A program made the translations under genes and the position numbers. Below are positions 26,266-59,563 of a stretch of 64,000 nt of DNA, piece by piece (the first letter of the stretch is position 1; each line of letters begins with the position of its first letter). The stretch spans positions 372,001 to 436,000 of the IMG/VR virus record IMGVR_UViG_3300032770_000001; one strand, 5' to 3'. The notes beneath the pieces are model-generated. The model saw nothing but the letters and a program-made list of their open reading frames with translations. It made no database searches and was not told the DNA's origin.

Positions 26266-27597
26266 ATGGCAACTCCAACACTGGTTTCAGCGGGTTACGG
26301 CAACCCGGTAGTCTACGGTGGGCACATTCAGAACGCTTGGTCAAACAACCAAGGCGACAACATTGTGGTCAGCCCGACCGCTGGCAACACGCTTGTCGTG
26401 TTCGTCTTCGGTTTCCGCACCTACGATCCGTTCAACTTGTTCCACAACACAACTCCGGTTGTCCCGACTGGCTGGTCCGTCGGTATCAACGACATGACTC
26501 TGACCCCGACGATCACGGACAACTCCGGTGACTCTGTTGCCGTCACGTCCGTCACTGAGACCACAACGGCACTGACCCTGACTGATGTCAACACGGCGGT
26601 GGGTGGTTCGGCAGTCTACGATGGCACCATCACTGGTGGTGCTGCGAACGCTCTGGCTGGCTACAAGTTCCAAGTAGCAGGCTTTACGACCGCAGCCAAC
26701 AACGGCACATTCCTTTGCACGGCGTCTACCGCGACGAGCTTGACTCTGTCGAACGCAGCCGCAGTTGCCGAGACGCACGCCGCAACCGCGACGTACTCGT
26801 CTGTGGCACTGACGACCGCGAGCAACAACTTCGGCGTCGGCGACGTAGTCGTTCTGGCTGGCTTTACCACGCAGACGTGGTTGAACGGTCAGTCGCAGGC
26901 TGTTGTGTCTTCCGGCTCGACCTTCAAGGTCAATGACAGCACGTTCCACGCAACCTCCGGTCCGACTGCACAGGCAGCCGCAACCGCAGCCCGTAACTCC
27001 GGCAACGACTGGGTCACGGTCACTGGCAAGGTTCAGAACGGCGACGTGGATTACACCCCGTCCGGTGTGACCGACTTTACCGTCTCGTCCAAGTGGGACT
27101 TGAACGGCAAGTACCCGTCCGTTATCGCCTACTACGCGACAAACGTTTCGGGCGGCACCTACAACCTGAACGTCAACTCCTGCTATCAGGATGGCACGAT
27201 CCGCCCCGGCGATCTCGCGGCTGGCAAGCCGTACTTCGATGGCGGCGTGGACATCCACGTTCTGGAATTCTCCGGTCTGTTGACTTCCGGCATCGGCGAT
27301 CAGTCCGCAGGTGCAATGACGGCGTCCAACCCGGCGACGGTTTCTTACACCACGGCGGCGAGCGGCGACCTGATCCTCACGGGCGGTCTCATGAAGAACG
27401 GCAACGCCTTCTCGACCTATGCTCCAGTTGGCACCACGGGCACTTTGATGCTCGCGACTGGCAAGGGCGTAAGCTCGCAGGCTCACTGGGGCATCCAGAT
27501 GCAGCTTCAGACTGCGAACGGCGCAATCACCCCCGGCTTTACGAACCCACTGGGTTACGAAATGGCCGTGGTTTCACTCGCACTCAAGCACGCTTAA
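26266..27597 (+). CDS. Virion structural protein (T/A/G/S-rich, beta-barrel repeats)
   Basis: Strongly biased codon usage; NNFGVGDVVVLAGFTTQTWLNGQ domain; own terminator. Confidence 0.65.
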   Translation: MATPTLVSAGYGNPVVYGGHIQNAWSNNQGDNIVVSPTAGNTLVVFVFGFRTYDPFNLFHNTTPVVPTGWSVGINDMTLTPTITDNSGDSVAVTSVTETTTALTLTDVNTAVGGSAVYDGTITGGAANALAGYKFQVAGFTTAANNGTFLCTASTATSLTLSNAAAVAETHAATATYSSVALTTASNNFGVGDVVVLAGFTTQTWLNGQSQAVVSSGSTFKVNDSTFHATSGPTAQAAATAARNSGNDWVTVTGKVQNGDVDYTPSGVTDFTVSSKWDLNGKYPSVIAYYATNVSGGTYNLNVNSCYQDGTIRPGDLAAGKPYFDGGVDIHVLEFSGLLTSGIGDQSAGAMTASNPATVSYTTAASGDLILTGGLMKNGNAFSTYAPVGTTGTLMLATGKGVSSQAHWGIQMQLQTANGAITPGFTNPLGYEMAVVSLALKHA

Positions 27598-27616
27598 TCC
27601 TTCACGGATTAGCGCG

Positions 27617-27648
27617 AGGGGCGGCTGATTTGCCGCCCCTTCTTTTTT
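27617..27648 (+). terminator. Rho-independent terminator
   Basis: AGGGGCGGC/GCCGCCCCT stem followed by TCTTTTTT. Confidence 0.85.
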
Positions 27649-27726
27649 CCCATAAAAATGGTCGAAAACCTCTCTTGGAAGTCGAAAAAAGTTCGTATTA
27701 TATCATAGAGGTCGAATTTTAGTCAA

Positions 27727-28485
27727 ATGAGTGAGAATACACCGTACTTCGACAGCATCACATCCGCCCGTGCAATGCTCCTCGATGAGGATGAAGCCCT
27801 TCATGGCGCAACCCTGCTTTCGATGGAGTCCGATCCGGAGTTTGCCCGTGAGCAGAAAACCCTTGCCTACATCCAAGACAACTTCCCATCGTTCCTGAAG
27901 TACCTGCGGGAACTGAAAAAGGAAGATCAGGAATTGCTCCTGAGCTACTACATTCTCGCCAAGACCCAGAACACGCTCGCGGTGATCCACCGCAGCACTC
28001 AAACAGTGTGCAGCTTCCGCATCCGCATGGCCCGCAAGGTGCTGGGAGCCATGATGCTCTGGAACGGCGTGCCGGACGAAACCATCATGAGTCCGATCCT
28101 TGCCAAAGCAGGACTGGAAGACGGTTTGGCTCAGGAGGATGGCACTCCGGTCGCCCTGTCCACCGTGATCGCCATGTACGCCAAGACCCGCAGCTTCCAG
28201 AAGATCGCCGAGGTCTTCAAGCTCCACCGCCCGGACATCCGCCGCGCCATGAGCCGTTCATCCAAGACCTTGATGGAGACCAAGGACCCGGAGCAGCACG
28301 CACTGGGAGCCTACATCCACAGCTTGATCGACAAGGCAAATCCCAGCGGCACCGGATTTTCCAAAAGAAAAGTCTCGAAACTCGGTAATATATATCGTAC
28401 AGACCCGGATATTCTGGGTGAGTTCCGCATCAAAGTGGATGACCCTGAGTTCGAACACATGTTTGTTTCGAGAGCTAACCGATGA
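27727..28485 (+). CDS. Double-HTH, sigma region-4-like regulator
   Basis: LKKEDQELLLSYYILAKTQNTLAVIH.STQTVCSFRIRMARKVL and RSFQKIAEVFKLHRPDIRRAM. Confidence 0.55.
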   Translation: MSENTPYFDSITSARAMLLDEDEALHGATLLSMESDPEFAREQKTLAYIQDNFPSFLKYLRELKKEDQELLLSYYILAKTQNTLAVIHRSTQTVCSFRIRMARKVLGAMMLWNGVPDETIMSPILAKAGLEDGLAQEDGTPVALSTVIAMYAKTRSFQKIAEVFKLHRPDIRRAMSRSSKTLMETKDPEQHALGAYIHSLIDKANPSGTGFSKRKVSKLGNIYRTDPDILGEFRIKVDDPEFEHMFVSRANR

Positions 28486-28754
28486 ACGATCAAGAGCTTC
28501 AGCAACATAGATTAGAGCAAGAACGCGAGGATTCGCGCAGACGGTATCGACTCGTATGCATCAAACAACTGTTGGAAAGCGAGGGCGGTCGCGACAAGTT
28601 CGCAACCTCGTTGGCGGAAGTTCTTCGTCGGAAGCCGGAGGCAACTCGCTTCGCAATAACCGAGACTAGGATTGAGGAAACGGTCGAGGCTCTCGGTAGG
28701 GAGTATGAGCAGCGTTTGCGGGATGTTTTTGAAGTTGCAAAAACGAGAATTTAG
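28482..28754 (+). CDS. Small protein resembling the MCP N-terminus
   Basis: QLLESEGGRDKFATSLAEVLRRK vs MCP QLLKTAGGRQKLAASLGPSLRRR. Confidence 0.65.
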   Translation: MNDQELQQHRLEQEREDSRRRYRLVCIKQLLESEGGRDKFATSLAEVLRRKPEATRFAITETRIEETVEALGREYEQRLRDVFEVAKTRI

Positions 28755-28762
28755 GAGAGAGT

Positions 28763-28945
28763 ATGACACTCGATATGGTCAAAGCAGTGATTGAACGCGC
28801 CAGCGTGGGGCGCACACCCCAAACGATCAAGTCTTCAGTCGGCTTGTCGTTCCCGGAAGTGAACTACATCATCGAACAGTTCCGCCGTGGTCAAAACGCG
28901 AAGCAGATCACTGAGACGATGAACAAAAAAGGCTTCAAGCTGTAA
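28763..28945 (+). CDS. Small HTH-like protein
   Basis: AGGAG RBS; GRTPQTIKSSVGLSFPEVNYII. Confidence 0.55.
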   Translation: MTLDMVKAVIERASVGRTPQTIKSSVGLSFPEVNYIIEQFRRGQNAKQITETMNKKGFKL

Positions 28946-29017
28946 GGAAATCCTCAGTATTGAATAGTGTGTCCCTAACGGGCATGTACCAATTTTCAAG
29001 ATACTGAGGATAGTTCC

Positions 29018-29515
29018 ATGCGTACTTTTTCTGTTGAACCGCAGTTCAACGACACCGTTGACATGCTTGCCCTAGCCATTGGCTATCTTTCCGAACCAAC
29101 CCCCAACAACTCCATCGGACAAGCGGCGACCGACGCCGAGGCCGAAGCTCTAATCAAAGAGGCTGAGAAAGGCGGTCAGGTCGCTCAATACGTCATCTTC
29201 AACCCGCAAGATTATCACCTATTTCGCTACCGCAATCCGCGTCTCATCCATCACTTCGATTACGAGACACAGCAGCGCCTCGTCCGCCGTGGCATCGTTG
29301 GCTACCTGTGGGGAACCACGGTCGTGCTCGACAAGAATGTCACACGCGGCTATATCGTAGTCAGTGCGGACAGCCGCGAGAATGCGTTGAAGAGCGACAA
29401 ATCCCTTATTGTCGAGATCAGCAAGTTGGAAATTCCGAATCTTTCGATCACTGTGTCGAAAGCGAGTACGGACTGGTCGAACGGGCCATGCCCGGTATCG
29501 CAAGATCAAGACTAG
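29018..29515 (+). CDS. Truncated MCP paralog (A-domain-like part only)
   Basis: VIFNPQDY...DYETQQRLVRRGIVGYLWGTT...V.RGYIVVSAD vs MCP VFFNPRDY...DRETQRKLLKTGVMGYLWGAT...V.YGSIYILAD. Confidence 0.8.
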   Translation: MRTFSVEPQFNDTVDMLALAIGYLSEPTPNNSIGQAATDAEAEALIKEAEKGGQVAQYVIFNPQDYHLFRYRNPRLIHHFDYETQQRLVRRGIVGYLWGTTVVLDKNVTRGYIVVSADSRENALKSDKSLIVEISKLEIPNLSITVSKASTDWSNGPCPVSQDQD

Positions 29516-30519
29516 GACTTTGGGAGACCCAACACGCTCATGATCCGGGCGACTTCGGCTGGATCATTCTTGATGGGTGCTGTCGCAAAGGGATCGGTCG
29601 GATTAAAGCAGGAGCGAACCATCTCGCTCCATGTCCGGTCGGATTCCCATCGACAGTTTTCCTCACTCCAATGGATGGATGAGAGTCTGGTTTTGAACAC
29701 TGTGCGCTTGCCGAACTTGATGAGCACGTATGGCGTGCCGAAATCGGTGATTATCTGCCAGACCACGCCTGTACCCTTGCCGACGACCGTGATCTGCGTC
29801 CCCGGCTGGATTCCCCTGCCGTAACCACGCAACGTTTCATGTCGCCACGCTTCATCTTGAAAGTACCGCAGTCCATCATCCTTCCAGCCGTAATCCTTCA
29901 CCCAGAGGGGCACACGCAGGCTGCTCTCGCCGTTGTCGAAACGAGACTCGGTAAGAAACATATCGACGTTGAAAGCTGACAGGTTCTTCAACCATTCTTC
30001 GGCGACACGCACCTTCGGCGGCAGTACGTCCATCGGGATCACGAAATTCTTTGGATACCCGTACTGCGCCCTGTAGCCGACCTCGCATTCAATGATCGAG
30101 CCCCACAGTGCGACCTGTCCGTGGATGCCCTTCTCCGCGTATTTGATCCGCACCAGATGGGCGAAGTCCTTGGCGGCATAGATACCGCAGCGGCAGTCAT
30201 CGACTGGAGATTCGTGTTTCACGACGTTCAAGAAAAACCATCGGGCTTCCGCCTCGGTCATTGGTTCCCTCGCACCGAGGTCGATGAACTGACCATCGGC
30301 GGTGAGCGAGGGACTGGCTCCGCGAACGCGAGTGTTCACCCAACTGGTAAAGTTGTGAACCTTCGGCTTCATGTAATGCTTGGTGATGGCTTTGTTGCAG
30401 GTCGCAACCATTGCCTGTCCGGGAACCCACGGCTCATGGTTGAGCGACGTGAGCCCCCTAGCGTCCCAATCCCACGTGCGGTACGCGATGAGAGGATCGA
30501 TGTAATCAGGGATTATCAT
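29512..30519 (-). CDS. Conserved hypothetical protein (CxCGIYA / GxVxLWG / GYRAQ family)
   Basis: IPDYIDPLIAYRTW...HESP..CRCGIYAAK...GQVALWG...GYRAQYGYP. Confidence 0.65.
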   Translation of the reverse strand: MIIPDYIDPLIAYRTWDWDARGLTSLNHEPWVPGQAMVATCNKAITKHYMKPKVHNFTSWVNTRVRGASPSLTADGQFIDLGAREPMTEAEARWFFLNVVKHESPVDDCRCGIYAAKDFAHLVRIKYAEKGIHGQVALWGSIIECEVGYRAQYGYPKNFVIPMDVLPPKVRVAEEWLKNLSAFNVDMFLTESRFDNGESSLRVPLWVKDYGWKDDGLRYFQDEAWRHETLRGYGRGIQPGTQITVVGKGTGVVWQIITDFGTPYVLIKFGKRTVFKTRLSSIHWSEENCRWESDRTWSEMVRSCFNPTDPFATAPIKNDPAEVARIMSVLGLPKS

Positions 30520-30701
30520 TCTTGTCCGAGGAATGGGTGAAACTCTTCCCACGGCCCGTCGCCGAAGTTGTAGACCGAGACCACGCCGTCATCCCAATGG
30601 ATTTCGAACTTGATCCAACTGAGCACCTTGACGGTGCCCTTGACGCCGGAGTCGTTCAGAATGACGCGGCGTCCTGTCACAATTTCCTGTGCGAATGTCA
30701 T
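30516..30701 (-). CDS. Small SH3-like hypothetical protein
   Basis: GRRV...GTV...IHWDDG; coupled on both sides. Confidence 0.55.
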   Translation of the reverse strand: MTFAQEIVTGRRVILNDSGVKGTVKVLSWIKFEIHWDDGVVSVYNFGDGPWEEFHPFLGQE

Positions 30702-58603: not shown

Positions 58604-59563
58604 TTAGTTCTCGCCGTAGTTGGCGGTCGAGTTGAAGCGACCATTGACCGTAAGACGCTGCACGCCGGACGGGTTGAACACGAGGAAGCCGAGGTTCTCG
58701 AAGATCGAGAAGCCGATCTGACGGAGGTCAGGACGGTCGGCGCTCATGACCGTGAGCGGAATACGCTCTGGGATAACGCCGAGGAACTCTGCGTCCGCCA
58801 GAATGTAGATCGAGCCGTAGCCGACCTTACGCGACTGGAGGAGCGTTGCGCCCCAGAGATAGCCCATCACGCCCGTTTTCAACAGCTTGCGCTGTGTTTC
58901 GCGGTCGATGTTCTGTTGGGTCCACTTCAACAGGTCCGTGTAGTCACGGGGGTTGAAGAAGACGAACGCGACTGAGAGGTCATGACGCTGCACCTGACCA
59001 AAGCCGTCTGCCATCGAGTTGATGTCAATCGGAGCGTTGATCGGAATGTCAGGGTTGTAGACCGGATCATTCGAGTTCTTACCCGCTGCGCTGTTCGCGA
59101 CACCGTCAAACAGAACGAACACGTATCCGTCTTCGGCTGCGCCCACTTCGGCTTTCGCCAAGTTCAGTGAACGAGCAACCAAGTCGAAACGGCGCTCTTT
59201 GATCTGCGTGATCGGGATCATCGGATTGGACACGATTTCGAACGTCGGAACCGTGACGCGCTTCGGTTTTGTAACGCGGACGATGTCACCACCTTCTTCG
59301 CCGACGATGAATGCTTCGACGAAGGACGAACCCGGAGTCGAGCCAACGGTCATCGCGTTGACATCGAATTCCTTGTCGTAGATGGGCAGTGCGCCATCCG
59401 GAAGAGTTTCGACCATGAGAGCCTTGCGAGCAATGCTCATATAGTCACGGCGACGACGCAGGGACGGACCGAGCGAAGCCGCAAGCTTCTGACGCCCACC
59501 CGCCGTCTTCAAAAGTTGGCCGAGCATTTGCGTCTGCTGTTGTGTGCGAGAAAGTTGTGCCAT
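58604..59563 (-). CDS. Major capsid protein (HK97 fold)
   Basis: Position after scaffold and decoration genes, strong RBS and terminator; RRDY.SIARK...LPDGALPIYDK, FEI.SNP, GYLWGA motifs of large-phage MCPs. Confidence 0.85.
   Translation of the reverse strand: MAQLSRTQQQTQMLGQLLKTAGGRQKLAASLGPSLRRRRDYMSIARKALMVETLPDGALPIYDKEFDVNAMTVGSTPGSSFVEAFIVGEEGGDIVRVTKPKRVTVPTFEIVSNPMIPITQIKERRFDLVARSLNLAKAEVGAAEDGYVFVLFDGVANSAAGKNSNDPVYNPDIPINAPIDINSMADGFGQVQRHDLSVAFVFFNPRDYTDLLKWTQQNIDRETQRKLLKTGVMGYLWGATLLQSRKVGYGSIYILADAEFLGVIPERIPLTVMSADRPDLRQIGFSIFENLGFLVFNPSGVQRLTVNGRFNSTANYGEN

What the first reader, a model, noticed from the sequence alone, without database searches (positions are those of the whole stretch)
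28482..29515. Two separate mini-genes that mimic different parts of the phage's own major capsid protein
Seen: 28482..28754 has QLLESEGGRDKFATSLAEVLRRK, matching the MCP N-terminus QLLKTAGGRQKLAASLGPSLRRR. 29018..29515 has FNPQDY...DYETQQRLVRRGIVGYLWGTT...GYIVVSAD, matching MCP FNPRDY...DRETQRKLLKTGVMGYLWGAT...GSIYILAD. Both are intact ORFs, about 30 kb from MCP, on the opposite strand, in an operon with two HTH/sigma-like genes. The middle and the C-terminal strands of MCP are not represented, so neither could form a shell. Known: host sensors such as CapRel and Lit detect capsid proteins, and satellite MCP paralogs (SaPI Ccm) alter assembly. Inference: these are decoys for capsid-sensing immunity, dominant-negative poisons of competing relatives, or assembly timers.
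Basis: partly seen in the sequence, partly recalled or inferred. Interest (0 to 1): 0.85.

Follow-up and report, generated by a model that had tools for sequence, protein, structure and literature searches.

The report
Two conserved mini-genes derived from capsid protein

Summary
The window is part of a ~456-kb jumbo phage from a wetland metagenome. Its nearest isolate is the acidobacterial phage Tunturi_5, and its capsid protein is of the phage G gp27 type.

- **MCP:** window 58604-59563 (-).
- **ORF C (29018-29515, 165 aa):** a free-standing HK97-fold A-domain. Profile-profile E is 5e-21 against MCP residues 178-258. A model built without any MCP in its alignment finds only HK97-fold capsid proteins in the PDB.
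- **ORF C family:** small proteins of 100-200 aa in related phages, with dN/dS 0.1-0.3. They evolve far faster than the MCP and occur patchily.
- **ORF A (28482-28754, 90 aa):** matches the MCP N-arm, residues 5-40 (E about 1e-6). A 56%-identical homologue in a second lineage keeps the match, colinear from the N-terminus (E 5e-9). Nine of ten differences from a close relative fall at third codon positions.
- **Not a pseudogene:** no MCP similarity links the two genes, the gene between them differs between lineages, and one close relative lacks ORF A cleanly.

Both lie in a variable accessory island downstream of a weakly Q/sigma-like gene. Function is untested. My best guess is competitive mimics of MCP contacts. 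Immune decoy and an unrelated new function stay open.

The parts
27616..27641 (+). Intrinsic terminator-like hairpin (10 pairs, 8 G-C, T-run) ending the upstream 443-aa gene. It marks the start of the four-gene unit.
27727..28485 (+). 252-aa gene (p252), weakly Q-antiterminator or sigma region-4 like. It is conserved at 57-89% in relatives, and the DNA downstream of it is a variable accessory island.
28482..28754 (+). ORF A, 90 aa: a small, probably helical protein whose residues 18-53 copy the MCP N-arm. Its start overlaps the p252 stop codon (ATGA).
28533..28640 (+). N-arm-like segment of ORF A (residues 18-53), matching MCP residues 5-40.
28763..28945 (+). 60-aa gene that looks HTH-like by eye only. 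It is unrelated to the MCP. L001 has a homologue at 38% identity, and L013 has a different 88-aa gene in this position.
29018..29515 (+). ORF C, 165 aa: a free-standing HK97-fold A-domain protein and a member of a conserved family of small phage proteins.
29048..29374 (+). Segment of ORF C (residues 11-119) homologous to MCP residues 178-258. It contains an insertion (residues ~25-52) relative to the MCP.
29512..30552 (-). Convergent 346-aa gene of unknown function whose end overlaps the ORF C stop codon. It holds the same position in L001 and L005.
58604..59563 (-). Major capsid protein, 319 aa, of the phage G gp27 / Tunturi_5 type.
59444..59551 (-). MCP residues 5-40 (N-arm), the part copied in ORF A. 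It is nearly invariant across the MCP clade.
58790..59032 (-). MCP residues 178-258 (A-domain), the part copied in ORF C.

Best explanation
Shown: ORF C and ORF A are two separate, intact accessory genes under purifying selection, each derived from a different piece of the HK97-fold capsid protein of this phage clade. ORF C is a stand-alone A-domain, the part that forms the centre of a capsomer. It has a family-specific N-terminal helix, a variable insert that carries a Cys/His cluster in some relatives, and a conserved C-terminal tail. ORF A is a small protein whose first half copies the MCP N-arm. Both lie in a variable island downstream of a conserved regulator-like gene, on the strand opposite the structural genes.

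Inferred: they act as competitive mimics of MCP contacts. ORF C would occupy the A-domain to A-domain contacts that MCP subunits make within a capsomer. ORF A would occupy whatever binds the N-arm helix. In staphylococcal phage 80alpha that partner is the C-terminal helix-and-hook of the scaffolding protein (PMC5644958). The expected result is that capsid assembly is modulated or antagonised. Whether the target is the phage's own assembly (timing or fidelity of a very large shell) or that of a co-infecting relative is not resolved.
For: Homology of ORF C to the A-domain:
- BLASTP E 4e-13 and hhalign E 4.9e-21.
- A profile of 19 small proteins with no MCP among them hits only phage G Gp27 among PDB sequences.
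- The AF2 model has pLDDT 80.7. Its top Foldseek PDB hits are HK97-fold capsid proteins (D3, HK97, lambda, T4 gp23 and gp24), and also the A-domain-like PF0899.
- The ESM Atlas agrees.

Homology of ORF A to the N-arm:
-.
- The independent L013 homologue matches MCP 6-38 at 52% identity, E 5e-9, colinear from residue 5.

Selection:
- ORF A, window against L006: 8 synonymous and 2 non-synonymous changes, 9 of 10 at third codon positions, omega 0.07. Against L013, omega is about 0.2.
- ORF C family: omega 0.1-0.3.

Descent from this MCP clade: the small-family profile scores 60-71 bits on Tunturi-like MCPs, against 31-34 bits on the phage G and LR745208 MCPs.

Shared constraint: 18 of the 20 columns conserved in the small family carry the MCP consensus residue, against 8 of the other 38 columns.

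Accessory character:
- On one contig the MCP is 94% identical to the window's while ORF C is only 36% identical.
- The genes are absent from Tunturi_5 and from the p252 islands of the 463-kb and 155-kb relatives.

Precedent for competition at the N-arm and scaffold interface: PMC5644958. Precedent for a self-encoded truncated capsid protein that blocks assembly: Ty1 p22, PMC4599808.
Against: - No expression, interaction or phenotype data exist. No RNA run was listed.
- The residues ORF C shares with the MCP may simply be the fold core, so they do not prove a shared binding surface.
- Outside about 80 residues, ORF C has diverged beyond recognition from the MCP. It also carries its own conserved motifs, which hints at a new function.
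- The MCP of this clade is 86-96% conserved, so a poison aimed at relatives would also hit the phage's own MCP.
- ORF A is missing from the close relative L001, which keeps ORF C. The two genes are therefore not an obligate pair.
- The patchy distribution argues against any core role in assembly.
Confidence: 0.4

Rival explanations
1. Counter-defence. The fragments bind, or shield the MCP from, host immune sensors that recognise capsid proteins. They would work as non-activating antagonists, or as cloaks for newly made MCP.
For: - The genes evolve fast, occur patchily and lie in variable islands, which is typical of conflict genes.
- In L120 the same island holds DNA methyltransferase-like genes.
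- Capsid proteins are known triggers of CapRel, Thoeris and other systems (review PMC13728456).
- The N-arm has no fold core, so its conservation in ORF A suggests a shared binding partner.
Against: - A fragment carrying the recognised epitope would be expected to trigger a sensor rather than block it. This rests on what is known of the Gol peptide and Lit, from my own knowledge.
- Surface similarity of ORF C to the MCP is low.
- No defence system of the unknown host has been linked to these genes.
- No phage-encoded capsid decoy turned up in the literature searches.
Confidence: 0.22
2. New function. The A-domain fold was recruited as a scaffold for a role unrelated to capsids, for example a regulatory or nucleic-acid-binding role. 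ORF A would be an unrelated small helical protein that merely retains ancestral sequence.
For: - ORF C has family-specific conserved segments absent from the MCP: an N-terminal helix followed by a PTPNNSI motif, and a C-terminal TDW motif.
- Several homologues carry a His/Cys4 insert.
- In this lineage ORF C appears co-transcribed with regulator-like genes.
- A cellular A-domain-like protein, PF0899, exists.
Against: - Two different MCP pieces lie side by side in two lineages. That is hard to explain if neither has anything to do with capsid biology.
- The MCP-identical motif is the best-conserved part of the small-protein family.
Confidence: 0.25
3. Minor structural component. ORF C would be a vertex, plug or decoration protein of the very large capsid.
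For: Paralogues of capsid proteins can be structural, as with T4 gp24, which is among the fold hits.
Against: - ORF C lies outside the structural module and on the opposite strand.
- It is absent from Tunturi_5 and from large relatives whose MCP is 92-95% identical.
- It lacks the N-arm, E-loop and P-domain needed to join the lattice.
Confidence: 0.08
4. One fragmented MCP pseudogene that is decaying neutrally, with a small gene inserted in the middle.
For: The N-arm piece lies upstream of the A-domain piece on the same strand, in the same order as in the MCP, in both the window and L013.
Against: - dN/dS is far below 1 for both genes.
- Each has its own start codon and ribosome-binding site.
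- No MCP similarity lies between them.
- The gene between them differs between lineages.
- ORF C occurs alone in at least eight other loci and in another genomic context.
- ORF A is precisely absent from L001.

A split ancestral paralogue as the remote origin of the pair is not excluded.
Confidence: 0.03

Closest known systems
Phage G Gp27 / Tunturi_5 gp334 major head protein (HK97 fold; phrog_2522; PDB 6wkk)
   Same: ORF C shares the A-domain sequence and predicted fold. ORF A shares the N-arm sequence. Both are closest to the Tunturi-like MCP clade.
   Different: Each mini-protein holds only one segment. The E-loop, spine helix and most of the P-domain are missing, so lattice formation is not expected. 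They are also accessory genes, not core genes.
SaPIbov5 Ccm, a satellite-encoded homologue of the helper phage capsid protein (PMC8569155)
   Same: An extra capsid-protein homologue that alters assembly of the main capsid protein.
   Different: As I understand it, Ccm is a full-length HK97-fold capsid-protein homologue that co-assembles into the shell and is encoded by a satellite (not checked here beyond the abstract). The genes here are single-domain fragments encoded by the phage itself.
SaPI1 CpmB competing with the 80alpha scaffold at the capsid N-arm (PMC5644958)
   Same: Competition by molecular mimicry at the interface between the N-arm helix and the scaffold. This is the mechanism proposed for ORF A.
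   Different: CpmB mimics the scaffold side of the interface. ORF A would mimic the capsid side. The interaction is not shown here.
Ty1 p22, a self-encoded truncated Gag that poisons particle assembly (PMC4599808)
   Same: The element's own capsid protein, in truncated form, acts as a trans-dominant inhibitor of assembly.
   Different: [quoted passage not shown] Here the fragments are separate, diverged genes (35-52% identity) in a DNA phage.
T4 gp24, the vertex paralogue of gp23
   Same: A duplicated capsid-protein gene kept within the same phage.
   Different: gp24 is full length, structural and encoded in the head module.
PF0899 / DUF1884 (PDB 2pk8), a cellular A-domain-like protein
   Same: A stand-alone protein with an A-domain-like fold. 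It is a Foldseek hit at E 0.07, probability 0.87.
   Different: There is no detectable sequence relationship. It is an archaeal cellular protein. ORF C is clearly derived from a phage MCP.

Membership tests
HK97-fold major capsid protein (phage G gp27 type) | A-domain with its conserved strand and helix motifs | tested here: met
   For ORF C: hhalign E 4.9e-21 against MCP 178-258. The only PDB sequence hit is 6wkk Gp27. Foldseek hits are HK97-fold capsids.
HK97-fold major capsid protein (phage G gp27 type) | Complete fold in one chain: N-arm, E-loop, spine helix and P-domain, A-domain | tested here: not met
   ORF C aligns only to MCP 178-258 and ORF A only to MCP 5-40. tblastn finds no other MCP piece in the window or in 22 related loci.
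HK97-fold major capsid protein (phage G gp27 type) | Core gene of the head module, present in all relatives | tested here: not met
   The genes lie about 29 kb from the MCP on the opposite strand, in a variable island. They are absent from Tunturi_5 and from several relatives.
Fragmented MCP pseudogene | Neutral evolution (dN/dS near 1), or frame disruptions | tested here: not met
   Omega is 0.07-0.2 for ORF A and 0.1-0.3 for ORF C. All homologues are intact.
Fragmented MCP pseudogene | MCP-like sequence linking the two pieces | tested here: not met
   tblastn finds nothing in 28755-29017. The spacer encodes a separate gene that is replaced by another gene in L013.
Ccm-like assembly-redirecting capsid homologue | Full-length capsid homologue that co-assembles into the shell | tested here: not met
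   These are domain fragments only.
Ccm-like assembly-redirecting capsid homologue | Encoded by a satellite that exploits a helper phage | tested here: not met
   They are encoded on the 455,708-bp phage contig, which also carries the MCP.
Trans-dominant truncated capsid inhibitor (Ty1 p22-like) | Truncated form of the element's own capsid protein | tested here: inconclusive
   The fragments derive from the capsid protein of the same clade, but they are separate and diverged genes, not products of the MCP gene.
Trans-dominant truncated capsid inhibitor (Ty1 p22-like) | Inhibits particle assembly when expressed | not testable with these tools
   This needs expression in a host infected by a related phage.
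Decoy or antagonist of capsid-sensing immunity | Binds a host sensor that recognises the MCP and prevents its activation | not testable with these tools
   The host and its defence systems are unknown. No such phage protein was found in the literature searches.

The most novel reading that the evidence does not exclude
Phages of this clade carry dedicated 'capsid-fragment' genes, a free A-domain and an N-arm mimic. These would act in trans on capsid-protein interactions, either as self-encoded or anti-competitor assembly antagonists (a phage counterpart of Ty1 p22) or as antagonists of capsid-sensing immunity. Small proteins with A-domain-like predicted folds in other jumbo phages (Erwinia Y3, PaBG, Noxifer, Motura, BcepSauron) would then point to a widespread class that has not been recognised.
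Probability: 0.35. Interest if true: 0.85.

Novelty: new variant of a known kind. Interest (0 to 1): 0.6.

Why it matters
Extra capsid-protein homologues are known as full-length structural paralogues (T4 gp24) or as satellite hijackers (Ccm). Single-domain pieces of a capsid protein kept as separate, selected accessory genes by the phage itself do not appear in the literature I could search.

If they act on capsid contacts, they would give a genetic handle on how very large HK97-fold shells are controlled. They would also show a new way for phages to interfere with each other, or with the growing list of host defences that sense capsid proteins.

There is also an evolutionary point. The genes show directly that an HK97 A-domain can persist as an independent protein, which bears on how the fold arose and how it is reused.

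Tried and rejected
- **AF2 model of the MCP.** It was meant to map the N-arm and A-domain. That alignment was too shallow, the model reached pLDDT 35 and it is unusable. Domain assignment therefore rests on homology to 6wkk, on the ORF C model and on general knowledge of the HK97 fold.
- **Family libraries.** Pfam, NCBIfam and PHROGs gave nothing significant for ORF A or the 60-aa gene. ORF C got only weak major-head-protein hits in PHROGs.
- **p252.** No PDB sequence relative was found, alone or as a profile. 'Sigma-like' stays tentative.
- **RNA evidence.** No RNA run was listed. Only wetland DNA runs hold the locus. Laying their contigs added only fragments and one further ORF A variant.
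- **Weak MCP-like hit in L120 (E 0.035).** It lies inside a DNA methyltransferase-like ORF and I judged it spurious.
- **TAG recoding.** I considered it because relatives have CTA-anticodon tRNAs next to ORF C. The window uses TAG as a stop in 10 of 55 long ORFs, and read-through of ORF A would add only four residues, so I dropped it.
- **Similarity of the ORF A C-terminal half to the MCP spine helix.** I suspected it by eye, but hhalign does not support it.

Full report
**What the window is.** The window comes from a 455,708-bp viral contig from a wetland metagenome. The gene at 58604-59563 (-) is the major capsid protein (MCP). It matches phrog_2522 'major head protein' at E 7e-42. It is 70% identical to the major head protein of the 309-kb acidobacterial jumbo phage Tunturi_5 (PMC11924767). 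It also matches phage G Gp27 (PDB 6wkk) at E 1e-52. This MCP type is very common in soil and wetland data: 1162 protein clusters at E<=1e-10, and several contigs of 220-463 kb.

**The observation.**
- ORF A (28482-28754, 90 aa): residues 18-65 align with MCP 5-52 at E 1e-6. The match remains the best non-self hit when ORF A is searched against all six frames of the window, at E 1.3e-4.
- ORF C (29018-29515, 165 aa): residues 58-119 align with MCP 200-258 at 38% identity, E 4e-13.
- tblastn of the MCP against the whole window finds these two pieces and nothing else, in particular nothing in 28755-29017.

**ORF C is a free-standing A-domain and belongs to a family.**
- Database searches found five homologues at 60-64% identity (183-202 aa). 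An exhaustive search found further small proteins of 100-190 aa down to about 30% identity. Full-length MCPs appeared only at E about 1e-5.
- A profile of 19 of these small proteins, with no MCP included, hits a single PDB sequence: the phage G capsid protein, residues 141-233.
- Profile-profile comparison with an MCP alignment gives probability 99.4% and E 4.9e-21. ORF C 11-119 aligns with MCP 178-258, and ORF C 25-52 is an insertion relative to the MCP.
- An AlphaFold model built from the small-protein alignment has pLDDT 80.7. Its best PDB matches are HK97-fold capsid proteins (D3, HK97, lambda, T4 gp23 and gp24) and the A-domain-like archaeal protein PF0899. The ESM Atlas points the same way.
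- The small-family profile scores 60-71 bits on Tunturi-like MCPs but only 31-34 bits on the phage G and LR745208 MCPs. The family therefore stems from, or tracks, this MCP clade.
- Of the 20 aligned columns conserved in the small family, 18 carry the MCP consensus residue. Only 8 of the other 38 columns do.
- Parts specific to the family are an N-terminal helix followed by a PTPNNSI motif, a conserved C-terminal tail with a TDW motif, and a His/Cys4 insert in several homologues that the window copy has lost.

**ORF A is rarer but real.**
- Protein searches found only near-identical copies.
- A metagenome locus, L013, carries a 76-aa homologue at 56-58% identity.
- That homologue matches MCP residues 6-38 at 52% identity, E 5e-9, colinear from its own residue 5. 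It looks like a copy of the very start of the MCP.
- The two-sequence ORF A profile matches the MCP profile at E 1.9e-6.
- The C-terminal 40 residues of ORF A are conserved between the two lineages but resemble nothing in the MCP. The ESM Atlas holds a confident model of ORF A (pLDDT 0.82) without informative neighbours.

**Selection, not decay.**
- Between the window and the close relative L006, ORF A has 8 synonymous and 2 non-synonymous differences. Nine of the ten are at third codon positions, and omega is 0.07.
- Against L013, omega is about 0.2.
- ORF C family pairs give omega 0.1-0.3, with dS near saturation.
- All homologues examined are intact.

**Genomic context.**
- A strong terminator at 27616-27641 follows the upstream 443-aa gene.
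- Four closely spaced plus-strand genes come next: p252, ORF A (whose ATG overlaps the p252 stop), a 60-aa gene, and ORF C. The last two have good Shine-Dalgarno sequences. A minus-strand gene converges on the end of ORF C.
- p252 is conserved in relatives at 57-89% identity. What follows it is not:
  - window: ORF A, 60-aa gene, ORF C
  - L013: ORF A, an unrelated 88-aa gene, ORF C
  - L001: a 59-aa gene, ORF C, with ORF A cleanly missing
  - L111: small genes only
  - L112 (the 463-kb contig): nothing
  - L120: methyltransferase-like genes
- In at least five other relatives the ORF C homologue lies instead directly after a tRNA array.
- On one contig the MCP is 94% identical to the window's while the ORF C homologue is only 36% identical.
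- Tunturi_5 has neither gene.
- Taken together, these are fast-evolving, mobile, dispensable accessory genes. ORF C is the older and more widespread of the two.

**Pseudogene reading rejected.** The colinear order (N-arm piece, then A-domain piece) allows a remote origin from a split paralogue. The present state is two independent genes, for these reasons:
- each has its own start codon and ribosome-binding site;
- no MCP similarity links them;
- the gene between them is interchangeable;
- each occurs or is absent independently of the other;
- both show purifying selection.

**Mechanism (inferred).**
- In HK97-fold shells the A-domains meet at the centre of each capsomer. This is general knowledge, and the fold is described in PMC5701804.
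- In 80alpha the C-terminal helix-and-hook of the scaffold binds the N-arm helix, and the satellite protein CpmB competes at the same capsid-protein binding site (PMC5644958; N-arm contact read).
- A free A-domain and a free N-arm helix are therefore the two pieces most likely to compete with the MCP for its partners without being able to extend a lattice.
- I rate competitive interference with capsid-protein contacts as the most likely mode of action (0.4). The target is unresolved: the phage's own assembly control, or a co-infecting relative.
- The conflict-gene signature fits a role against capsid-sensing defences equally well (0.22). A fragment that carries a sensor's epitope would, however, be expected to trigger the sensor rather than block it.
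- A new function unrelated to capsids remains plausible (0.25), because what ORF C shares with the MCP may be only the fold core, and the family has its own conserved motifs.
- A minor structural role is unlikely (0.08).
- Neutral decay is excluded for practical purposes (0.03).

**Comparison with known systems.** The closest are listed below. None is a single-domain fragment maintained as a separate gene by the phage itself, and literature searches for capsid decoys, fragments or paralogues in phages returned nothing equivalent.
- Full-length capsid paralogues: T4 gp24 and SaPIbov5 Ccm (PMC8569155).
- Mimicry at the N-arm interface: CpmB.
- Ty1 p22, a truncated Gag that blocks particle assembly (PMC4599808).

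I class the finding as a new variant of a known kind.

**Limits.**
- There are no expression data.
- There is no usable MCP model.
- No multimer modelling was possible.
- The host is unknown.
- Presence or absence in relatives rests partly on pattern-based scans that can miss diverged copies.

Noticed in passing
L004 1377-1530; L009 5763-5921; L012 1287-1446; L015 5686-5838; L016 5753-5912: In relatives, the ORF C homologue lies directly after a tRNA array. The array includes one or two tRNAs with anticodon CTA (amber-suppressor type), and in L009, L012 and L016 also a tRNA with an enlarged anticodon loop read as 'ctag'. The window has no tRNA gene in its 64 kb and uses TAG as a stop in 10 of 55 long ORFs.
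   Followed up: partly
L120 2729-4504: The p252 homologue here is 591 aa because of an intein-like insertion with a LAGLIDADG-type motif. The island downstream holds two ORFs that look like C5 DNA methyltransferases.
   Followed up: no
window 28486-29515 and the syntenic regions of L001, L013, L111, L112, L120: The DNA downstream of the conserved p252 gene is a variable accessory island whose gene content differs in every relative examined.
   Followed up: yes
ORF C homologues P0002, P0003, P0010, P0011 and L016 6001-6573 (the position of window ORF C residues ~34-52): These homologues have an insert carrying a His and several Cys residues spaced like a zinc-binding knuckle. The window copy has replaced it with a short acidic helix.
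   Followed up: no
Foldseek against BFVD with the ORF C model: The top structural matches include uncharacterised proteins of 106-155 aa from unrelated jumbo phages (Erwinia Y3, twice; Pseudomonas PaBG and Noxifer; Achromobacter Motura; Burkholderia BcepSauron). This hints at a wider class of stand-alone proteins with A-domain-like folds.
   Followed up: no
window 28700 (contig of wetland run X2): A contig joins the window sequence at 28700 with different upstream letters that stay in frame. This appears to be a third variant of ORF A with a diverged middle part.
   Followed up: no
L015 2064-2462: A tmRNA gene (tag ANAPKAMAAHA) is predicted in a related phage contig near the tRNA arrays.
   Followed up: no
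window 27697-27726 (-): A near-consensus sigma-70-type promoter (TTGACT, 18 nt, TATAAT, with an extended TG) lies on the minus strand between the terminator and the p252 start, pointing away from the operon. The count of such sites in the region is no higher than in shuffled sequence.
   Followed up: no
P0013 (408 aa): This protein has six tandem repeats, each weakly matching ORF C residues ~74-123. Its origin is unknown, and the match is probably unrelated or a repeat artefact.
   Followed up: no
window 26266-27597 (+) and its homologues in L001, L111, L112, L120: The 443-aa gene upstream of p252 keeps its N- and C-terminal ends but has a variable, Thr/Ser/Ala-rich middle that differs in length between relatives (296-443 aa).
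   Followed up: no
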